Source: Calcarisporiella thermophila CBS 279.70 (lineage: Eukaryota > Fungi > Calcarisporiellomycota). Taken from it: DNA of 64,000 nucleotides. The first letter of the stretch is position 1; each line of letters starts with the position of its first letter. The stretch lies in assembly GCF_041956535.1 (NCBI RefSeq), contig NW_027192195.1, positions 35,731-99,730 of the forward strand. The letters are read 5' to 3'. Below are positions 14,108 to 30,315 of this stretch, piece after piece. The notes beneath the pieces are model-generated. The model searched no databases. It saw only the letters and a list, made by a program, of their open reading frames with translations, and was not told where the DNA came from. Made by a program: the position numbers and the translations under genes.

Positions 14108-16331
14108 ATGTCCTTATCCCCCTCGGTTCATCAGACCGCTTCCAACATCAGGGGCGCTGCTGTGAATTCTACCAATCATCCCGAGGCGGTGACTCCCCCT
14201 TCGTCGTCGGCTGCCAAAAGTTTCTTTGCCGAAAAAAGCTGGAAATTTTACACTACCATCGCTCTAGCTGTCGTTGTGGCGGGCGCGGGCTACTGGTATC
14301 TAACGGCATCCTCTTCTGCTATACTGCCGAAATCTGCACGGAAGAAGAAGAAGGCAGAGAAGAAGGCAAGTAAGGGGAAAAAAGATTCAGCTAGCGTAAA
14401 AGATGCAAAAGGTAATATTTTTTGTTTTATTAATCTTGTGAATATTAGGCGTTTGACTCTAATTCCATACTCTTGATGACTAGGCGATGACTTGTTAAAT
14501 CTATCTGAAGAGGAAATTGAGAGTTTGTCTAAAAAAGTGCGTTATTTCTTATTCATTAACAATTTTTTATAAACGCTAACCCCTATCCTCTATTCTTACT
14601 GGTGATTAGGAACGAACTGACGCCGCCCAATCCCTCAAAACCACCGGGAATGCAAAATTTGGTGCTAAACAATACCAGGAAGCTATCATTTACTATTCCA
14701 AAGCGATTGAATTCCACCCCGATCCTGTTTATTATGGGAACCGTGCTGCCTGTTACGCAAATATTGGTGAAATCGAAAAGGTGATCTCGGACTGCAATGA
14801 AGCGTTGTCAATGGATCCGGTATATATTAAAGCACTGAACAGGAGAGCTCAGGCTTATGAAAAGTTAGAGGAGGATGAAAGTGCCCTATATGGTAAGTCG
14901 TCCACTAATTCAATTCTAATCTCAAAAGCAGTTTGTTGAGCTAAAGAATTGACTTTTTTCTCAGATTTCATGGCCGTTTGTATCCTTGACGGATTCAAGA
15001 ATGAGGTTGCTGCCGCTTCCATGGAAAGAATGATTAAGAAAGTGGCTGAGAAGAAAGCGAAGGAGATGTGGATTGTAATTGTTTTTTTCCAAGGAATAAC
15101 TAGAACGCTGAAGCACTCACAAAATTTTATGTTTACACATTCTAGAACAAGAAGCCAAAATTACCTTCAAAAACATTTATTAGTACCTATTTTGATTCCT
15201 ACCGCAAAGAGACCGATGGCCTTGAAAGCCTCTCCGAAACTGACGACAGCGGTGATGCCTACTACTTACGTGCTCGCAACTTCCTTAACCTGAGCAAATA
15301 TGAAGAAGCAATGCAAGCCTGCTTCACAGCTTTGGAACGTGGGTGCGAAAAATGGAGTGCTCAAGCCTCCACATTGAAAGGCACTTTCCTATCCCTGCAG
15401 GGTAATTCACAAGAGGCTTTAGAGTACTTCAAGAAGGCAATCGAGTTTGATCCAAAATACACTAAGAGCTATATTAAAAGCGCTGGACTATATCTTGAGC
15501 AAAGTATGCTGGACTATTATTTAGTACCTATTTGTAATGCTTAACCATTACCTTATCTTTTAGACGACTCTGTCACCGCGTTCAAGCAATTTGATGATGC
15601 AATTGCAATCGATCCTAATGATCCGGACATCTACTTCCATCGCGGACAACTGCATTTCCTTACTGGCGATCTTGCTGCCGCAACGAAAGATTATGCTCAC
15701 AGCATTCAACTCGACCCGGATTTCCCCTATGGGCATATCCAGCTGGCAATTGCGCAGTACCGCCAAGGATCCGTGTCCGCGGCAACAACGACGTTCCGTC
15801 AAGCCCTAAAGCAATTCCCGCGATCCCTAGAAGTGCTGAACTATTATGGGGAAGTATTGCTGGATCAGCAGAAATTTAGTGAAGCGCAGGAATGGTTTGA
15901 AAAAGCAAGGGAGATGGACAAGACCAACCCGTTGCCCCTTGTGAACCTTGGTCATGTGGCATTGCAGAGAGATCAAGACTTCAAAAAGGCAGAAGAATAT
16001 TGTCTCGAGGCTCTTAAAGGTAAAAAAATATTGCCCCTCCTTATCTTGAAGTTCTTTTACGGATGTGTTGAATTTTTCCGCTTTCCCCCTCTTGAATATC
16101 TTAGTGGATCCGGATTCGGATGTCGTCCTTGCCACCTATTCTCATCTCCTCATGCAGCAAGGCCGCCAAACAGACGCCAAACCTTACATGGAGCGCTCAA
16201 TTTCCCAAGCTCGCACCGAATCGGAACTGGCGCAAGCTCTCCAATTCCTGCTTGCCACCCAGGCGCAGGAGGAATTCATGAAAAGGTATCCTGAACATGC
16301 CGCACGTTTGAGCGCAATGGCGGGACTGTGA
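14108..16331 (+). CDS. TOM70: Mitochondrial import receptor Tom70 (TPR protein, multi-exon)
   Basis: N-terminal TM anchor (IALAVVVAGAGYWYL) plus basic patch; TPR clamp LKTTGNAKF...YYGNRAACY...YIKALNRRAQAYE; further TPRs (YFHRGQ, NYYGEVLLDQQKF). Confidence 0.93.
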
Positions 16332-17200: not shown

Positions 17201-17872
17201 ATGCTAAACATCTTCAACAGGCTAAAATCCCCTAACGGCAAATCCTTGCCTTGCCTCACTCGCCTTCACATCCTCTCACTAGATAACTTCCCCCTCCTTC
17301 AACTCCATTGCACGTACATGGTCATCTATCGTGTCTATTGCCCCTCATATCCTCTCTCCCAGCTCACAGGTCGAACCCATCAGGTCTCGCTCCAAAACTA
17401 CTGCGCAAAATGGGACATGTGCGTGAATGGGCGAGTACGGATACCGATTATCGAAGAAGAAAAGTATAGGACTGAGGGATTGGGGCCATGCTTTTTGGAG
17501 ATGCGTATTATGCAACTCCTTAATGGAAAAAGTACGCCTCTAGGTCATGTGAGAATCAATCTGGCGCAATATGTTGGCGGCAACGAACACATTAGTGGGC
17601 CTCGAAGATACCGCCTACAAGGCACTGTATACCCCCGCGCGACTCTTTTATTGGATCTTAGCGTTGAACCAGAAAACACACAGGAGCTACAAACAAAAAA
17701 ATATCGCATTCCTCCTCTTGATAGGTCGCTCCTAGTGCCCAATGAACTGGATTTGTTGGAGATCCTCAAACGTGAGCAAGAGTCGCGTCGCCGACAAAAG
17801 AGATTGCAGAAGAATCGATGTCACCGTCGTGAAAATGTGCAGCCGGTGGCAATAGCAGAAATAAATTATTGA
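17201..17872 (+). CDS. NT-C2 (EEIG1/EHBP1 N-terminal C2) domain protein
   Basis: LGHVRINLAQYV...RRYRLQ...ATLLLDL pattern of the NT-C2 family; intronless 223 aa. Confidence 0.72.
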   Translation: MLNIFNRLKSPNGKSLPCLTRLHILSLDNFPLLQLHCTYMVIYRVYCPSYPLSQLTGRTHQVSLQNYCAKWDMCVNGRVRIPIIEEEKYRTEGLGPCFLEMRIMQLLNGKSTPLGHVRINLAQYVGGNEHISGPRRYRLQGTVYPRATLLLDLSVEPENTQELQTKKYRIPPLDRSLLVPNELDLLEILKREQESRRRQKRLQKNRCHRRENVQPVAIAEINY

Positions 17873-21228: not shown

Positions 21229-22656
21229 TTAAAAGTTGGATGTAGCGCCCTCTGCCACCGGAACCACCTGGTAAAAAATGGTCATCCCATCCATCTATTA
21301 AAAAACGTTACGATTAGTATTTAGCCTACCAGTCCTACCCTAGGGACAAGGGGCCAATTGCTTACCATATGATCGCTGACATGACAATGGAACTAAGAGT
21401 TCAATTCAAGGTACATTTAGTTAGCAGACTACTAACTACTCCCCCAGGTATTCTTTACTTACCATCCACTCCCCTTGGTTATCTGGTATCATATCTACAA
21501 CCCGAAACGAGGCCGGCATTAAGTCCACGACATCTGTTCGATGCCCATTATAGAGGACAGTTGCTCCATGCCAGTGGGCAGTATGCATATCGAACGAACC
21601 TCCCAGTGACATCACATACCATCGAACCCGCGTACCCAATCCCAGGCTCAGCTCGTCAAGATTGTTATACATGAATCCATTAATGGAGTTCTTGTAGTTG
21701 GATACACGGAAGCCCGGATCTTTTCTGTCCACGCCCCTGGGATCATCACAGTATTCAAGGATATTCTGTTCGAGATACGGGGATCGGTTCTCGTCGATAA
21801 TGATCAGAATGGTAAACACCTCTTGGTCCAAATGACCGGAGGGCATCCCGCGTTCATTGAGCATGCCTGGCCGGTAGATGACCAGCGGACCCATCAAGCC
21901 CGCGTAAATATCACTAAGCTCTTCGACGTGGGAATGATAGGTGTAGAGCACGGACGAGGCATCGGCGGGGCCCGGCCCACTGCGTTCTGGAACTGTCCAC
22001 ACGTATACAAAGGTCTCACCGGGCTTCACAGCGGCACCCGGCTGGTTTTTTGCTTCCGCATGCATAACTCCTTCGTTCTCTCGTGTGTAATGAACCCCAT
22101 GTGGATGCATTGAATATGGTCGGGAGGCCATGTTCTTAAATGTTACTCGTATGGTGTCCCCAACCTCGGCACGAATTACGGGGCCTAAGAGTCCAAGTGA
22201 CCATTCGTGTGTGATTGGATTACGGAAGGTGGCATCCGTATATGAGCGGTATGCCGCTTTCTTGTACGTACTTCCAATACGGTGTGGGCCTTGTACTAGG
22301 AAAGTCCTTGCCCTAGTTTCATTCAGTGGAGCTCCATGGAATCGATCATATTTCATAGGGGCATAATTCCATATGATCTCTTCGGCTGTTATAAAATATT
22401 CTCGTACCTTACCGCCGCCCCCTGCCTTCCCGTCGCCCTTCGCAATAGGATCCTGGTCGAACACCTCTTCCGGGAGGGGTATCCGAGTGGGCTTGGGAGC
22501 AGTTTTTTCAAATTCAGCTCCTTCTTCGGGACCATCGGCCTCAGGACCGTCGTCATCACCGTCACGCTTTGATAATCGAGGCTGAGGAAGTGAGAGAGCT
22601 AGCGCTAAAACACTGAAGAACGATAGGCTTATAAAGAGTAAGTATGGTAATCGCAT
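21229..22656 (-). CDS. Secreted two-domain ceruloplasmin/hephaestin-like multicopper oxidase (~428 aa, 3 exons)
   Basis: Signal peptide + KR; domain 1 REYFITAEE..WNYAP, GLLGPVIRAEVGD, HPHG, YHSH; domain 2 DENRS, SING, HTAHWHG. Micro-exons 21392-21366 and 21294-21229 complete WMFHCHVSDHMMDGM, followed by a stop. Confidence 0.88.
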
Positions 22657-23781
22657 AAGATTATAGAAGTATAGTAGGAAAACGATCAAAAGGGGGTAAA
22701 GTCGGATGCAAAGAAGTGGTTCGAATAAATAGAGGCTCGATACAAAACTTCAATTCGAACCAGCCAAAGAGCAGATAATAAAGGGTGTGGCCTGAACAGA
22801 TCCAAGACGTTACCGGTGCAGATGAGGGCAGTTAAATACTGAATAATAAATTTTATTTTTAGAGAGTGCGGCTTGGTTTGAATCATCACTAGTGAATTCC
22901 CAGAACGATTGGGGTTGTTCACGTTGGCGATTTTCTGATTATTCGATTAAAAATAAGCGACATACTGCAATTGTATTGATTATATTGAGTTTAAAATACC
23001 GCTGACACACTCTAACCAGCTGCGGGAGCCTACTTGGGAATATAGGTTCCATAAAAAGCTATTTATTAAATACAAAGATGTCCATGCTGAATCGTCGGAT
23101 GTGAGATCCGTATGCTATATGAAAAAAAATGATCCGTCTTAATGAAATCTCCTTTCTCCCGGCAATCAGCTCGTCAAGTTCGTCCATTGACTTTCAGCGG
23201 AGGAGAGATTTGAGCAATAAACGATAGAGAAAAATGTTTTAATGCTTTTCCCTTCCTCCGAACTTCGTCATTTCAAGGCTAGGATCAAATCTCACACTTC
23301 GGACATGCAAGCTCCAGACCAGTCATCTGTATATAATAGCACAGAACATATACATTGTTTAAGGATTTTTCCGCCTGATCATGCTCGAAATTACACGCCA
23401 CTTCGTCGATGGATCGTTTACATTGGTGCAAATGATCCAGTGTTAAGCTGGATTAATGGAAGACAAACAGGAATGCTTTGTTTCGGAAAATGTCAACCGA
23501 CTTGACAAGGAGGGGATAGGTGCGTGTTATGTTTATTCTCAAGAAATATCTGCGGCGTTTCTTCTCAATATGCAGCTAATAAACGTGCTAAACTCTACCT
23601 GAGCAAAATGAAATAATGTGACTCTGACACTGTGGTTGTTGGGGGCGGAGGTGTGAACTGAAAAAAAATTTTCCCCCTCTGCTTCTTGCCACAATTCTTA
23701 ATTCTTCATTCACTTTGTCTTGGAATGACCAGGCGGGCGAGATGACTGCCCCCTTTAATCTATAAATACCCTGTCGTCATT

Positions 23782-26700
23782 ATGAGCTCCCGCATTCTAG
23801 AAGCCCGGATGCTATCCGAATCTCCAATCAACAACCCCACGCCTCCATTTCAGCACTATCCCTCTCAGCAATCCACAACTAAACGGCGCCACCGACCTCG
23901 CTCGCGCTCCCTCCCACCAAACCGCGCTGGTTATGTTGGAAAGGTGTCGTTCGATCTCCTCGATTCCTCTTTACCTCTTCTCTCCTTCACACTTCAGGCC
24001 AAGTCAAACGATTACAGGCGCACAAGATGGAGTCGAACTTTTCTAGTGACAACAGACGCACACTCTTACACCGACTACGATTACGCCTTAGGCTGGGTCC
24101 TAGAGAGGCTGGTGGACGATGGAGATGAAATCGTGGCATTACGGGTCGTATCCGTAGAATTACGCGAACTAAGTAATGACCATTTTTTGGGAACCTGACA
24201 AATTCGCTTGAAATCTAATACGCCGCATTTTTTATTTATCAGTGCTGAAGAATGATGCCGGGCTAACTCCATCGACGGGCATATTCGGCACGACTCTCAC
24301 TCCTGAGGGACTTAAGGCTCAGGTCGAGCAATCCCGCGAAGAGGCCCAGACAGTCATGGATAACATTATGGTGAAAAACAAGGAGAAGAAGGTAATGTAA
24401 CGCAATTCTGGATCTGACTAGTGTCGATGTTCCTGTGCCTGTTATTCATCAGCCTCATCTATTTGTGTTTCACTTTCCAGATAAGTATCGTTGTTGAATA
24501 TGTGGTTGGCAAGGTTCCAGACACCATTCAGAGTATGATCACCATGTATCAACCCTCGCTCCTTGTCGTAGGAACGCGGCATCGCTCGCCCATCAAAGGT
24601 CTTCTCTTAGGAGGCATATCGCGCTATTGTTTGCAACACTGCCCGATCCCGGTTGTGGTGGTGCGTCCGGAAAAGAAAAAGAAGAAGAAAAATCGTAAGC
24701 ATTCTTCGGGGACTCCAGGGCTCGCAAAACGCTTATCTGCGCTTTTACATCGATGGGCAACTCCTCCTACGCGTTATCCGAGCTCGATGGGAGACTCTCC
24801 CTACGATGCTGAGTCCGAGCCAGAATCAGAGGCAGATACACGATCTGAGATCTCTTCACGACCAAGTGAGACAGAGAGCATCATATTCGACGAGGTGTCT
24901 CTAGCATCTGAATCTACCAGTGATGCCCGCCGGTCTACCAATTCATCCGCATCCACTTCCTCATCCACCTCAACACCACCAAAGAAGCCGTGGCGCATTA
25001 CTACCTTGGTTGGATTCCGGCATCGCTCAGGTAACGAGTCAGAGCCAGAGAATGGCGGAGAACTAAGTGGCGGAGCGGGTGCTAGGGAGGCGATCTGGCC
25101 TCGACTGTGGAGATCTTCGACTCCGTTCCACTCCACCACGAGTGATTCTGATCAGGACACGCTGGATACCGATTTCGTACCAGTGGCATATCCGGAAGAC
25201 TATCCGATTGAGAATAAAGAGGTGGAAAAGGAGCAAAAAGAGTCGCAGGAGGGAAACGAGACCATAGAAGGCGAAGAGGAGAAATATGCTATTCCTGAGA
25301 AGCAGAAGGAGATGAAATTGCAACGCCTACAAGCCTTGTTTCGCTTTGGATTCCGACTACGTAAGCCTAAGCGTGCAGCTCTTGGAAATGGAAATGAGGA
25401 AAAGCAAGAGAAGAAAAGGAAGGGGGATAGAAAAATTAATTTCCAGGACGTGGAGAAGAGTGAGAATGAGGAGGGGGAGAAGGAGAAGGAGAAGCTGCAA
25501 GGAAATGGGGCGATTACTGTCATGGAGGCGGGATTGAAAGAGAACTATATGGACGAGAGTAGGGAGTCGCACATAGATGGACTCACAGAAAACAGTAGCC
25601 AAGAAGAGCCTGTTGGCGACGATGAGGAGGCAAGAACCTTGGAGGAAGTGGGAACGGAACACGTTGGGATGGAAGAGACCGGCGGCGTCAATGCAAAGTT
25701 AGACGAAGATGAGGGCCTGAAGCCTAGTGATGATGAATCCGTAGCGTCAGATGATACAATCAAAGACCACAATCACCGCTCCATCTCTGAATCATACTAT
25801 TCATCTGAGCACCCTCATCTCCCTACGGCCACGACTGATAACGACCCAAATCCTTGCGATGACTCCACGGCTAATTCCACCTCCAGCGTCGATACTGCCT
25901 CCACCATCGCGGACGAATCCTATCCGCAATCGCTTGCTAGGGTATTTAAGCGTCGTCACTCGGATCGTCTTCGCATGATAATGAAAATAGGAACTGCCGG
26001 TGACCGTGCAACTTTGCGTTCTCAGAATTCAACCGTCGAAACAAACGAAAGCCCTCCCATGCCACCTCAACCGCTTACAATCAAATGCGGATCTCACGAT
26101 AGCGGGTATGCACAGGACATTGAGTATTTACAAAATAACTGCGAGTCTCTTGGAAGAGACTGGAGCGATGGGTACGAGAGTCAATCATCGGTTGCGTCTG
26201 ACGCCACTGTCACCGAAAAGCGGCGGGGAGATGCATCGGGTTTGATGAACTTGGCTCTGCAACGCCAGCAACTCCTTGCCCAGCAACAGCGGCTTTTGCT
26301 GCAACAACAACAAGAGCAGTGGCAGCAAGCGGCGGTCACTGATGCTCCTCCGCCCCCCTCTAGCTCTGAACTTTCCACCCCTTCACTCTCCGCAACCCCA
26401 TCCTCTAACTCCAAACTATCCGACCTCCAACTCGAAAATGAAAGCTGGGATCGCGCATCCATCGCCTCTGAATCAGCTATTCGTGGACGTCGCTGGCGCA
26501 GGCAGGTTCGCTTGAAACATGAAATGGAACTAGGTGCGACTAGAGCATTGGGTGGTCTGATTCAAAGTTTAAGAAAGCCGGTTTCTTTATCGGACTCCAA
26601 GAACAAGGAGACGGCTGCCGGTGGAGATAGGGTGCACAAAAGACAGAATGGAAGGGCAGAAGAGGTTGGGTATGAAAATGTCATTGGCAGCGGAATGAGC

Positions 26701-27009
26701 GCTCGGTCAGTTTCTCTGCAGACAAAAACGTATGGTATTTCTGCCACATCCACCACCACATCAACCATCTGGAGTGGAGTTCTGGCTTATGGACGTCAAT
26801 TACGTGAATGGACTCTCGACACACGAGGCAAGAGCAAAAAAATGACGGTATTTGAGGACGACAGGGCCTCAGTTCGCTCCGATCCTACTGGGAAAAGACG
26901 AGCCAACGTGTGGCGCCGCTTGATGGACAAACGCGGGGAAGACCGGCTACCACGCGGATATGAGGAATTGGATTACTGGAAACCCTTGCCTCCAATTCCG
27001 ATTTCGTAG
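23782..27009 (+). CDS. Universal stress protein (USP) domain protein with a long disordered C-terminus (3 exons)
   Basis: KVSFD...TLQAKS.DYRRTRWSRTFLV...YALGWVLERLVDDGDEIVALRV; IVVEYVVGKV...PSLLVVGTR...LLGGISRYCLQHCPIPVVVVRP. Confidence 0.85.
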
Positions 27010-27862
27010 TACTTTTTTTGGATTATACTATATATACATGACACAGGATTTCTTTGGGACTATCTTATTTGCTTAGGGTATTCAAAAGCTATCGTACTGC
27101 TTTGCCTTTGGAAAATTTGAACTTTGATACCATTCATGATTATCTTCATTGCCATCACCCTACATATCTCAGCACATCCATTGATTAACATACGTTTTAT
27201 AATTTCTGTGTATATTTTAAACCCATTCTTAGTTTAGCCTTTTTTTTTCTTCTTGGACTTTTGTATTGTGAAATGTATGTATTGGAAACTTTCTGCGCTT
27301 TCTTCCTCTCCTCCTTCTTGCTTATTAGTTGTACTTGGAGAAATAATTAAAGCCTCATCCTCTCCATAGCAATCTCTCTACCCTTGGTTTTTCCTTGACA
27401 TCCCGATCTTGAATTCCTGGATTGGCCTGCTCAAACCGTTAGCCTCTCCTAACACTTTAAAAGGCAATCGTCCCACATTGAGGCTCAGACCTGACTTAAA
27501 TCCAGCAAATCGCCGTCAATAGTAATTATAGAAGAACCCGCCACACTATTTGTACAAACTAGCAGACCCAAGTCTTGGGCACCTTGTCTCGAATCCGGCT
27601 CACTGATTGTTCGCTTGCTTCCTCACTAGATCAGCGTAGGATTCGCACAAGTCGTGGCATCTACACATTAATGACCTCTGTTTCTAATGCTTAATGAGGA
27701 GCTGTAACGTGTTGTTTGCGGTTTAAAGGGTAATACAACCTGACCCTAACTTTTCAAACCGCCTCTCTGCGATCATCCTGGTGCTAATGCTAATCATGCG
27801 TCTTTCTAAATTCTAGACATCTCATTAGAACCAGTTTATTGTTTACCCATATATTTACAATA

Positions 27863-30315
27863 ATGCAACCTAAATTCCTACTGCGTTTCCTCTACGCATC
27901 CTTTCTTACTTTAATATTACTCGCCTCTCCTTCCACACCAGCTACAACCCCGTGCCTAATCTTCTTTAATAAATCGTTACACACCCTCGTCGGTCCTAGT
28001 GGCACCCTCAATCAGTTCCCCCTTTCCAATGGTGGAGACTTCCTTTCCTCCGTCGGCCCGAGGACTCCAATATCGATTGCTAACACGGCATGTGCACTTC
28101 TCTCCACTAACGTCACAATATGGCTTCCGTCCGATTTGAAAGGTCATATCTTCAGCGCAGAAGGAATATCCAATCCTTCTGCTCCCACCATTTCCAATAA
28201 GCCTACCGTTAGCACGCTCGTTTTACCCTCTTCTACTCTCCCGACTAGTCTTGTCCCTATAAGCTCACTGTTAACAGTAGCGCAACCTAGTAGCCTTTCA
28301 ACCCCTATTTCCATAGCGAATAGTAACAACAACAAGGATAGCCAAGCACCTCAACCAACAAAGGGTGTATTGGTGAGTGGCGAAACTGGACTTCCGGCGC
28401 GCGTTAAACGTATGTATAAAATATTGAGCTCTGCTCTGCCCCCATTTGAAAACTCAGTGCTGATAATGTAGGATTGGTGCCCGAGGATACTATCACCCTT
28501 AACACTGTTGATCTCAACCAACCAGAGCCCAAACTGTTCCCAATATCTGTGCGTCTCGATAATAGCGCTAAAGGATTGTTAAGCGAGCCACATCCACTCC
28601 CAGTTGCGGCTGTAGACAACACTCTCTTCGCCGTCAGTTCTCAGCACATCTATTCACTGGATGCAATGAGAAATCCGTTAATATTTAATGTTATGAACAT
28701 CACGGGAGAAAAAGCAGAAGTGGCCGCCGTTACAGGCACGAGCAATGGCCTATTCATCTTGCAAAAAGGCAGTGGGAATATTGGTTTCCAGCTACGACAT
28801 CTAATTCCAGGTCAAGAGCCAGTGCTGCTAAATGTGAACGGCGGCATCGCAAATACCAGCGGGAATATGCAGATGACAGGAGACGCCCAGACTCTCTACA
28901 TATTTTCCGAGAATGACAAGAGATTAACTCGAATAATTGCGGATGGAAACCTGGCCATGGCAAGCCCCTTAGATCTGCCCAATGACTTAACGGCCGAACA
29001 ACTAAACAATTTGAGGCTTGCAATGTTAGGCAATCGACCTTTACTAATAGCGGGAAACCAACTAAGGTATTACTCGCCAAGCGGTGTATGGGATGCAAGC
29101 GGTAGTCTCGTACCTGCTTCCACCCAACCCAACGCTGCCAAGACTGGCAGCCAACTGAGTCTAGGGGCAATCATTGGCATTACTGCAGGAAGTGTGGTCA
29201 TTTTATCCATGGCCACTGCTGCGCTTATTCTTCATCTAAGACGCAAGCGCACTCGTCTTCATTCACATCGGCTGGAGGAGAAAGCCTCGAGAGAAGCCGT
29301 CAATAGAGATTCGAGGTCACTCAAGGCGAGTGATGCCTTTGGTTCGCAGAAGATTGAAATGGAGACACTTCCCATCGGAGACTCCTTAAGTAAAACGAAT
29401 TCTACGTCGAATTTGGTGGATCCTGCAATCGGTATCCCATACCCGCTGGCAGATCAAACTGTGAGCTCTATGCAGGAGATGTTCACAAAACATGTGAGGG
29501 TGGGTCCGGTGCCAGAGCAGGTGCACCCAGATGCTCGGCAAAACACAGTCTTACTAAAACGATACCGCCTTGTGGATGATCCAGCGGCAAGCGCCAACAA
29601 AGTGCGTCAGGTGGAGGATACGATCACCAGCGAAGAATTTACCCTAGAATTCTTCTCCTGCTACAATGAGTTTGCGCGCCATGTAGCCATGCTCGACTAC
29701 CTTCGCGCTCCACACATCGTCAGTTTGCAAGCCGCCTACGACGCAGTCGGCACTTTTATCGCGGTTCACGAGCGTACGGGACAGGCTCTTTCGGAGCTTC
29801 TCTATGCGAACGAACCAATGGGTCTGAATCCATTCCTCAAGGGCTTTGTTAGTCGTTCGCTCATTCAAGCAATGCGTTGGGTCTGTACCAAACAGGTCGT
29901 CTATCTGACCCTCACCCCAAGCTGCCTCTCTAGCGAGCCGCATGACGAGACGGTTTGGAAACTGTGCGGGTTCGAGCAAGCCATGATCGCCAATGAACTT
30001 ATCGATGCGAGTGAGCACCTTTTGACCCCCTATTCAGCGCCTGAGCTGCTATTTGCCTCCAAAGGCGAATTAATTCAGGCCTCCTCCACCATGGATTCCT
30101 GGTCGCTAGGGTGTGTGCTCTATGAGATCTGGCTCAACCGCCCGCTATTTAAGAACATCGAGGAGGCCCGATCGGCCCTGCAACAGAGAGACTGGTTCCC
30201 TCCAGGGCTAGAATACCTAAGGGAAGAGGGGGAGGAGGGGGCGAGCATGATGAGGAACATACAATTACTCTTGAAAATCGATCCTAGAATTCGACCGAAT
30301 CCACAGGATCTCTAA
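27863..30315 (+). CDS. Single-pass receptor-like protein with a cytoplasmic pseudokinase domain (~796 aa, 2 exons)
   Basis: Signal peptide; intron 28410-28471; ectodomain; TM LGAIIGITAGSVVILSMATAALILHL followed by RRKR; kinase-fold motifs PHIVSL, WKL, YSAPELL, DSWSLGCVLYEI, LLKIDPRIRP. Confidence 0.8.

What the first reader, a model, noticed from the sequence alone, without database searches (positions are those of the whole stretch)
21229..22656. Eukaryotic two-domain ceruloplasmin-like multicopper oxidase (candidate homotrimeric 'proto-ceruloplasmin')
Seen: only two cupredoxin domains before the stop. Domain 1 has HPH and HSH (no T1 Cys). Domain 2 has HTAHWH and, via two micro-exons missed by the ORF track, HCHVSDHMMDGM. 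All eight trinuclear His plus the T1 His/Cys/His/Met are therefore present. Established: typical fungal MCOs (laccase, Fet3) have three domains; ceruloplasmin/hephaestin have six, with T1 sites in even domains. Type-B two-domain MCOs such as Streptomyces SLAC are homotrimers, and that architecture is the proposed precursor of ceruloplasmin. The motifs here (REYFITAEE..WNYAP, GLLGPVIRAEVGD, DENRS.YL..NI) are ceruloplasmin-like, not laccase-like. Inference: a secreted trimeric ferroxidase/oxidase retaining the pre-triplication unit; the acidic N-terminal segment could recruit metal ions.
Basis: partly seen in the sequence, partly recalled or inferred. Interest (0 to 1): 0.85.

Follow-up and report, generated by a model that had tools for sequence, protein, structure and literature searches.

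The report
Fungal one-third-size ceruloplasmin-like copper oxidase
This fungal gene encodes a secreted copper enzyme that looks like one third of the blood protein ceruloplasmin and probably works as a trimer; its family is old in early-branching fungi, where some members are built into an iron permease, but this copy has lost the iron-binding residues.

Summary
Observation confirmed. A three-exon gene (22656-21229, minus strand, 428 aa) in Calcarisporiella thermophila encodes a signal peptide, an acidic segment and exactly two cupredoxin domains, with all eight trinuclear His and a T1 His/Cys/His/Met. It resembles one ceruloplasmin repeat (about 240 bits, against 49 at best for SLAC-type laccases). 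The idea is partly published: Fusarium FOYG_17127 was described as a two-domain, predicted-trimeric ceruloplasmin homologue. The scan also noted such a gene on other contigs of this genome; there are two paralogs.

New here: the gene falls in a clade of chytrid, blastoclad, zoopagalean and mucoromycete fungi plus Amoebidium. That clade lies outside the animal repeats (D1+D6 deletion rejected, p=0.002 and 0.05) and is weakly sister to them (82/76). In four chytrid-lineage genera the unit sits inside loop 6 of the Ftr1 iron permease with ceruloplasmin's four iron ligands intact, so the family works as ferroxidases. This copy has lost three of those four ligands, and the genome has a normal Fet3-Ftr1 pair. 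It is most likely a trimeric oxidase for a non-iron substrate. Trimer, activity and expression are untested.

The parts
21463..22656 (-). Exon 1 (aa 1-398): signal peptide, acidic segment, cupredoxin domain 1 and most of domain 2
   Evidence: Pfam Cu-oxidase_3 and Cu-oxidase_2; about 240 bits to each ceruloplasmin repeat
22597..22656 (-). Predicted signal peptide (aa 1-20)
   Evidence: Hydrophobic N-terminus, Kyte-Doolittle 11-mers up to 2.5; no later TM segment, best 19-mer 0.77. Cleavage site inferred; no SignalP available
22564..22569 (-). Lys-Arg dibasic site (K30-R31), candidate Kex2 pro-peptide cleavage
   Evidence: Sequence; the same LSKR motif is in the C16 paralog; cleavage inferred
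22447..22563 (-). Acidic, Pro-rich segment (aa 32-70), found only in this paralog
   Evidence: 14 D/E, 3 K/R, no His or Met; absent from both paralogs
21930..22107 (-). Domain 1 trinuclear-cluster His: H184 (22107), H186 (22101), H241 (21936), H243 (21930); no T1 Cys in domain 1
   Evidence: Align with ceruloplasmin H101/H103/H161/H163
21568..21585 (-). Domain 2 HxxHxH motif: T1 His H358, cluster His H361 and H363
   Evidence: Align with ceruloplasmin H975/H978/H980
21595..21705 (-). Substituted ceruloplasmin-type iron site: V318 (=E935), N323 (=H940), S354 (=E272/E971)
   Evidence: ligand identities from PMC3738974; 82 of 116 two-domain relatives keep all four
21393..21462 (-). Intron 1, 70 nt, GT-AG, phase 0, found only in this paralog
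   Evidence: both paralogs read through this position without an intron
21366..21392 (-). Micro-exon 2 (aa 399-407): H400, C401 (T1), H402, D405 (=D1025, the one iron ligand kept), H406 (T1)
   Evidence: second-best family-HMM hit in the window
21295..21365 (-). Intron 2, 71 nt, GT-AG, phase 0; same position in both paralogs
21229..21294 (-). Exon 3 (aa 408-428 plus stop): axial T1 Met M411 and last strand; no membrane or GPI anchor
   Evidence: alignment of family C-termini

Best explanation
An intact, secreted, soluble type-B two-domain multicopper oxidase of the ceruloplasmin-repeat lineage. After signal and probable Kex2 cleavage, three chains form a ring that mimics ceruloplasmin's pseudo-threefold body. 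Each domain-2 T1 copper (H358, C401, H406, M411) takes one electron at a time from a substrate. It passes them through the H400-C401-H402 bridge to a trinuclear cluster built from four His of its own domain 2 and four His of the neighbouring chain's domain 1, where O2 is reduced to water. The ancestral family function is ferroxidation. In Calcarisporiella the gene triplicated and the iron pocket was remodelled while Fet3-Ftr1 handles iron uptake. This copy therefore most likely oxidises something other than Fe(II): small organic donors (laccase-like) or Cu(I). Shown: gene model, ligands, fold of the paralog, clade membership, loss of iron ligands. Inferred: trimer, copper loading, activity, substrate.
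For: All 12 copper ligands present. Purifying selection against the C16 paralog: divergence 0.27/0.20/0.68 by codon position, four-fold sites 0.78. AlphaFold model of the 65%-identical paralog P0001 (pLDDT 84.7) superposes on rat ceruloplasmin with TM 0.86, rmsd 1.4 A and Z 45.3, against Z 24-25 for small laccases and 16 for Fet3. In ceruloplasmin the cluster forms between D1 and D6, not within one repeat, and two-domain MCOs are active only as homotrimers (PMC3738974). Iron ligands: V/N/D/S here, A/E/D/T and A/A/E/T in the paralogs, E/H/D/E in all complete Ftr1-fused members and most prokaryotic members. Own Fet3-Ftr1 divergent pair at G000:C20:605065-608802. No metal-transporter gene next to any of the three paralogs.
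Against: No transcript, trimer model or assay. Loss of the ceruloplasmin ligands does not exclude a new iron site: the acidic N-terminal segment or other surface carboxylates could serve. Multicopper oxidases are promiscuous. One paralog has lost a cluster His and the Endogonales orthologs have lost three or four of the domain-1 His, so catalysis is not kept throughout the Mucoromycota branch.
Confidence: 0.55

Rival explanations
1. A secreted trimeric ferroxidase or Mn oxidase, with the acidic N-terminal segment or a remodelled pocket replacing the lost ligands; it would oxidise and detoxify Fe(II)/Mn(II) outside the hypha.
For: The family is tied to iron uptake: the unit is inserted in Ftr1 in Hyaloraphidium, Gonapodya, Cladochytrium and Nowakowskiella and fused to a ZIP transporter in Amoebidium. 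D405 is kept. The acidic segment has 14 D/E in 39 aa. Two TGCACC boxes lie in the upstream kilobase, not tested against chance.
Against: Three of four iron ligands are replaced by V, N and S. There is no membrane anchor and no adjacent permease. Fet3-Ftr1 is present in the genome. No upstream 9-mer is shared by three or more of the four promoters compared, including FET3/FTR1.
Confidence: 0.22
2. A copper-handling protein (Cu(I) oxidation or copper sequestration), or a subunit of mixed trimers with the two paralogs, in which catalysis is secondary.
For: The ascomycete member (Saxophila, FOYG_17127 type) lacks two cluster His and lies next to an HMA P-type ATPase gene. A bacterial member follows a BlaI/CopY-type repressor gene. 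The C1 paralog has His-to-Asp in the cluster. Three co-existing paralogs could hetero-oligomerise, the step thought to precede six-domain proteins.
Against: This copy keeps every catalytic ligand. It has no Met- or His-rich segment of the CueO kind and no copper-transport neighbour.
Confidence: 0.14
3. The gene is not expressed, or splices differently (intron 1 retained gives a 404-aa product without the T1 Cys), and is a decaying duplicate.
For: No RNA run was listed. The protein did not appear among database hits although both paralogs did, which may be because window records are withheld. The C1 paralog shows lesions.
Against: Canonical donors, acceptors and branch-like sites, phase-0 junctions that restore the HCH...H...M motif exactly, intact frame, strong third-position bias.
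Confidence: 0.05
4. The two-domain form is a secondary internal deletion (D1+D6) of an animal-type six-domain ferroxidase.
For: A D1+D6 fusion would also carry all eight cluster His and one T1 site.
Against: Animal odd domains (100/97) and even domains (97/90) each form a clade without the fungal sequences. AU tests reject grouping with D1 (p=0.002) and, marginally, with D6 (p=0.0498). No six-domain paralog was found in the genome.
Confidence: 0.03

Closest known systems
Fusarium oxysporum FOYG_17127 and its ascomycete orthologs (Zhang et al. 2020, PMC6994591)
   Same: Secreted fungal two-domain ceruloplasmin homologue, one third of ceruloplasmin, predicted homotrimer. A Saxophila protein (P0245) matches 17 of the 18 published FOYG residue positions I checked at a constant offset of 44 and falls in the same fungal clade as this gene.
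   Different: FOYG-type proteins lack two cluster His (HxD, HCQ); this gene has all eight. The paper found the gene in only a handful of ascomycetes and called it horizontally acquired. Here the family is broad in early-diverging fungi and Amoebidium, with subclades that follow host phyla. FOYG_17127 itself was not fetched; the link rests on the proxy.
Ceruloplasmin / hephaestin (six-domain animal ferroxidases)
   Same: Closest solved structures: about 240 bits per repeat, Z 45; 36-45% identity to each repeat; same T1 position in the even domain.
   Different: One repeat instead of three; the cluster must form between chains; three of four iron ligands are lost.
Streptomyces small laccase (SLAC), type-B two-domain MCO
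   Same: Two domains, T1 in domain 2, 4+4 cluster His; trimer expected.
   Different: Distant in sequence: 49 bits at best, domain 1 only, about 20% identity, TM 0.54; lacks the ceruloplasmin-type long loops.
Unnamed prokaryotic ceruloplasmin-like two-domain MCOs (Nitrososphaeraceae, Actinomycetota, Chloroflexota, cyanobacteria)
   Same: 46-52% identity, about 380 aa, same 12 ligands.
   Different: Most keep the iron site (82 of 116). They form separate branches of the tree. No solved structure and no NCBIfam model.
Fungal Fet3 ferroxidase
   Same: Multicopper oxidase; relatives of this gene appear to fill Fet3's role for Ftr1 in chytrid lineages.
   Different: Fet3 is three-domain, monomeric and membrane-anchored (own knowledge), Z 16. 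C. thermophila has a separate Fet3-Ftr1 pair.
Algal FOX1-type six-domain ferroxidases (Vasin et al. 2013, PMC3600357)
   Same: Built from the same two-domain unit.
   Different: Six domains with the cluster between D2 and D3; their repeats group apart from both animal repeats and this clade (93/89).

Membership tests
Type-B two-domain multicopper oxidase | Exactly two cupredoxin domains | tested here: met
   no further cupredoxin exon in the window
Type-B two-domain multicopper oxidase | T1 site (His, Cys, His, Met) in domain 2 only (definition of type B from own knowledge of Nakamura 2003) | tested here: met
   H358/C401/H406/M411; no Cys in domain 1; depends on the splice model
Type-B two-domain multicopper oxidase | Eight cluster His, four per domain | tested here: met
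Type-B two-domain multicopper oxidase | Homotrimer with inter-subunit trinuclear clusters | not testable with these tools
   No multimer prediction available; inferred from the ceruloplasmin-like domain arrangement and PMC3738974
Type-B two-domain multicopper oxidase | Copper loading and O2-reducing oxidase activity | not testable with these tools
   Needs purified protein
Ceruloplasmin/hephaestin six-domain ferroxidases | Six cupredoxin domains in one chain, cluster between D1 and D6 | tested here: not met
   One repeat only
Ceruloplasmin/hephaestin six-domain ferroxidases | Ceruloplasmin-type repeat sequence and fold | tested here: met
   (fold tested on paralog P0001)
Ceruloplasmin/hephaestin six-domain ferroxidases | Fe(II) site E272/E935/H940/D1025 | tested here: not met
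   S354/V318/N323/D405: one of four kept
Ceruloplasmin/hephaestin six-domain ferroxidases | Nested within the animal repeat clade | tested here: not met
   Animal repeats form one clade, 100/99, without it; AU tests
FOYG_17127-type fungal ceruloplasmin homologues | Same phylogenetic clade | tested here: met
   Through the Saxophila proxy P0245; clade support 94/80 and SH-aLRT 94
FOYG_17127-type fungal ceruloplasmin homologues | Degenerate cluster (HxD in domain 1, HCQ in domain 2) | tested here: not met
   This gene has HSH and HCH
FOYG_17127-type fungal ceruloplasmin homologues | Patchy, recently transferred distribution | tested here: not met
   Groups with Jimgerdemannia (100/99), has introns, three diverged paralogs
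Fet3-type fungal ferroxidase | Three domains, C-terminal membrane anchor, gene paired with FTR1 | tested here: not met
   Two domains, no TM; FTR1 is paired with a three-domain MCO on contig C20

The most novel reading that the evidence does not exclude
Early-diverging fungi and the ichthyosporean Amoebidium have kept, by vertical descent from the opisthokont ancestor, the single two-domain unit whose triplication in animals gave ceruloplasmin, hephaestin and factors V/VIII. In chytrid lineages it serves iron uptake as a natural single-chain ferroxidase-permease, inserted in Ftr1 loop 6, in place of Fet3. In Calcarisporiella it has been freed, triplicated as separate genes and retuned to another substrate. 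Six-domain proteins would then have arisen more than once (animals, algae, Paulinella).
Probability: 0.45. Interest if true: 0.75.

Novelty: new variant of a known kind. Interest (0 to 1): 0.57.

Why it matters
The model that ceruloplasmin arose by triplication of a trimeric two-domain oxidase has been argued mostly from SLAC, which is only about 20% identical. No ceruloplasmin-like two-domain protein has a solved structure. This family is about 40% identical to each repeat and, in the best tree, sister to the animal repeats, so it makes the model directly testable. The family also answers a functional question: relatives with the intact iron site are inserted in the Ftr1 loop that is known to contact Fet3 (PMC11817551), which points to a second, undescribed route to reductive iron uptake in chytrid-lineage fungi. 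This gene, with a full copper set, a rebuilt substrate pocket and a thermophilic host, is a natural contrast for what makes the unit a ferroxidase. Limits: the basic idea is in print for Fusarium, prokaryotic members are abundant, and this copy is derived, not the most ancestral-looking.

Tried and rejected
RNA evidence: the look-up of sequencing runs listed no run. The spliced 428-aa model was not searched or folded as a joined sequence; exon 1 was searched by reference and the annotated paralog P0001 was folded as proxy. AlphaFold of the Ftr1 fusion failed (pLDDT 45, six-sequence alignment) and was not used. The careful C20 mixture tree did not finish in two runs; only its quick tree is cited. 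One origin of all six-domain proteins could not be rejected (p-AU 0.244), so independent triplications are favoured, not shown, except within Paulinella (100/100). The idea that this gene replaces Fet3 in this genome was rejected. Promoter comparison gave no convincing shared element. The GTDB DNA scan was insensitive (18 loci). BopA (PMC5158116) was checked as a possible characterised relative and is a 528-aa CotA-like enzyme. The first ligand mapping was off by one in repeats 2-3 and was corrected. Intron positions near the HCH motif in Cladochytrium, Hyaloraphidium and Paraphysoderma do not match this gene's, so they give no support for common descent. Only the best 120-150 hits of each search were visible, so absence from Mucorales, Mortierella or Glomeromycota was not tested. 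Paper searches found no report of an Ftr1-MCO fusion or of this family in early-diverging fungi, but most subscription papers are outside the library.

Full report
1. Observation. The finding is real. On the minus strand, an ATG at 22656 opens a 398-codon exon ending in GEWM at 21463. It is followed by a 70-nt GT-AG intron, a 27-nt exon (21392-21366) with the HCH motif, a 71-nt GT-AG intron, and a 66-nt last exon ending in TAA at 21229. All junctions are phase 0 and both introns have branch-like sites. The 428-aa product has a hydrophobic N-terminus, a KR site at 30-31, an acidic segment (aa 32-70) and no later membrane segment. The copper ligands are H184/H186/H241/H243 in domain 1, H361/H363/H400/H402 in domain 2, and T1 H358/C401/H406/M411. 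A family HMM over all six frames of the window finds only exon 1 and exon 2, so no further cupredoxin exons exist. No RNA run was listed. As the operators required, I searched exon 1 by reference and left out any search or fold of the joined spliced sequence.

2. Organism and paralogs. The genome holds two more copies, at 65% and 58% identity. Both paralogs have an intron at the same codon as intron 2, which supports the splice model independently. Divergence from the C16 paralog is 0.27/0.20/0.68 by codon position, so the gene is old and under purifying selection. The C1 paralog has His-to-Asp in the cluster and a TAA four codons after the axial Met. The genome also has three ordinary three-domain oxidases, one of them divergently paired with FTR1 on C20, and no six-domain gene was found.

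3. What it resembles. Exon 1 matches each of ceruloplasmin's three repeats at 232-243 bits, while SLAC-type two-domain laccases reach 49 bits at best, on domain 1 only. The model of paralog P0001 (pLDDT 84.7) superposes on rat ceruloplasmin with TM 0.86 and rmsd 1.4 A and Z 45.3, against 24-25 for small laccases and 16 for Fet3. The unit is common in prokaryotes: over a hundred proteins of about 380 aa at 46-52% identity, with the 12 ligands almost invariant. It also occurs as a single unit in Jimgerdemannia, Thamnocephalis, Piptocephalis, Paraphysoderma, Blastocladiella, Quaeritorhiza, Cladochytrium, Nowakowskiella, Hyaloraphidium, Gonapodya, Saxophila, Amoebidium, Tribonema, Ploeotia and Soliformovum.

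4. Phylogeny. In a 112-unit IQ-TREE analysis (LG+G4) the gene groups with its paralogs (100/98) and the Endogonales (100/99). These sit in a clade of fungi, Amoebidium and Tribonema (94/80; 84/90 with Blastocladiella), with Zoopagomycota (99/97) and chytrid-lineage (98/88) subclades. All animal repeats form one clade (100/99), and the non-animal multi-repeat units form another (93/89). The fungal clade is sister to the animal repeats, but only at 82/76; a quick C20 mixture tree gives the same grouping at SH-aLRT 89. Domain-separated trees keep animal odd and even domains each in one clade without fungi. AU tests reject the D1+D6 deletion model for the odd domain (p=0.002) and marginally for the even domain (p=0.0498). 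A single origin of all six-domain proteins is not rejected (p=0.244). Rows left out: factor V/VIII-length proteins and units covering less than about 60% of the profile. The root rests on distant bacterial sequences. Secondary reduction is therefore unlikely, and 'retained pre-triplication unit' is the best but unproven reading.

5. Function of the family. In Hyaloraphidium, Gonapodya, Cladochytrium and Nowakowskiella, and in two environmental sequences, the unit is fused to the FTR1 permease. It is an insertion: the permease's two REXXE motifs and TM6 come first, then the oxidase, then the FTR1 loop-6/TM7 tail where the sequence is complete. The join lies inside one exon in Hyaloraphidium and inside one open frame in Cladochytrium, so it is not an annotation merge. 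Loop 6 is the part of yeast Ftr1 that contacts Fet3 and receives iron (PMC11817551). Ceruloplasmin's iron ligands are E272, E935, H940 and D1025 (PMC3738974). All four are kept in every complete fused member and in 82 of 116 two-domain relatives. I infer that ferroxidation is the family's ancestral job.

6. Function of this gene. Here those positions read S354, V318, N323 and D405, and both paralogs are also changed. The protein has no anchor and no transporter neighbour, and the genome has Fet3-Ftr1. Mechanism (inferred): a secreted C3 trimer; electrons enter at the domain-2 T1 copper, cross the His-Cys-His bridge to a cluster shared with the next chain's domain 1, and reduce O2 to water. Two-domain MCOs are active only as trimers (PMC3738974). 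The substrate is most likely not Fe(II) bound the ceruloplasmin way; organic donors or Cu(I) are likelier (0.55). Rivals: ferroxidase with a rebuilt site (0.22), copper handling or mixed trimers (0.14), unexpressed duplicate (0.05), deletion product (0.03).

7. Prior art and novelty. Zhang et al. 2020 (PMC6994591) described Fusarium FOYG_17127 as one third of ceruloplasmin, two-domain and predicted homotrimeric, found in a few ascomycetes and ascribed to horizontal transfer. A Saxophila protein matches 17 of the 18 published FOYG residue positions I checked at a constant offset and lies in the same clade, so the kind is known. FOYG-type proteins lack two cluster His, whereas this gene is complete. 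Vasin et al. 2013 (PMC3600357) stated that eukaryotes have only three- or six-domain forms and that no six-domain protein keeps more than one cluster. The present data contradict the first statement, and a Paulinella protein appears to contradict the second. I found no paper on the family's breadth in early-diverging fungi or on the Ftr1 insertion. The scan's earlier notes report the same kind of gene on other contigs of this genome; they are unverified and were not used as support.

8. Verdict. Observation confirmed, interpretation partly supported. It works like a type-B two-domain oxidase built on the ceruloplasmin repeat. It is not a member of the six-domain ferroxidases and fails their iron-site test. 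New variant of a known kind; interest 0.57. Most of the surprise lies in the family (Ftr1 insertion, sister position to animal repeats) rather than in this copy.

Noticed in passing
L049:4001-6680 (Hyaloraphidium, P0268); L047:3325-6032 (Cladochytrium); L051:3001-8273 (Gonapodya, P0405); P0244 (Nowakowskiella); P0371, P0373: Natural single-chain Ftr1 permease with a complete two-domain ceruloplasmin-like oxidase inserted in extracellular loop 6, iron ligands intact; junction within one exon. The Cladochytrium GenBank model misses the permease N-terminus. No paper found. Worth its own study.
   Followed up: partly
P0127 (Paulinella micropora, EukProt, 1275 aa): Six-domain protein whose three repeats group together (100/100) and keep three T1 sites, 23 of 24 cluster His and all iron ligands: looks like a recent independent triplication resembling the hypothetical ancestor.
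   Followed up: partly
P0208 (Amoebidium parasiticum, 704 aa): ZIP metal transporter fused to the same two-domain oxidase; transcript assembly only, could be a chimera.
   Followed up: no
L045:5001-6233 (Jimgerdemannia, P0027) and P0008: Endogonales orthologs keep T1 and domain-2 His but have lost three or four of the domain-1 cluster His: probably non-catalytic or electron-transfer proteins.
   Followed up: partly
L050:4001-5189 (Saxophila tyrrhenica, P0245): FOYG_17127-type gene flanked by DUF4396 and an HMA P-type ATPase, suggesting a copper-resistance cluster.
   Followed up: partly
L003 / G000:C1:1650075-1651190: Paralog VTP21DRAFT_711 has His-to-Asp in the domain-2 HxxHxH motif and a TAA where the other paralogs read on; possibly decaying.
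   Followed up: yes
L052:4001-7655 (Tribonema minus, P0218): A stramenopile two-domain member (375 aa over a 3.6-kb gene) nests in the fungal clade; possible fungus-to-alga transfer, support weak.
   Followed up: no
window 23491-23507: Spaced dyad (6-bp arms, 5-bp gap) about 850 bp upstream of the ATG, in the region shared with the divergent USP gene; significance not tested.
   Followed up: no
L004, FTR1-FET3 intergenic region on C20: A 16-bp dyad containing a TTTGCGC, CuRE-like element lies between FTR1 and FET3.
   Followed up: no
P0240, P0255, P0251, P0237: Other fusions of the same oxidase unit: TPR repeats, SCO1/SenC, DinB and an EGF-like domain.
   Followed up: no
window 23782-27009 (+), 27839-30315 (+), 17201-17872 (+), 15311-16294 (+): Neighbours: universal stress protein with a long low-complexity tail, a membrane kinase-like gene, an NT-C2 protein and a TPR protein; none is metal-related.
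   Followed up: no
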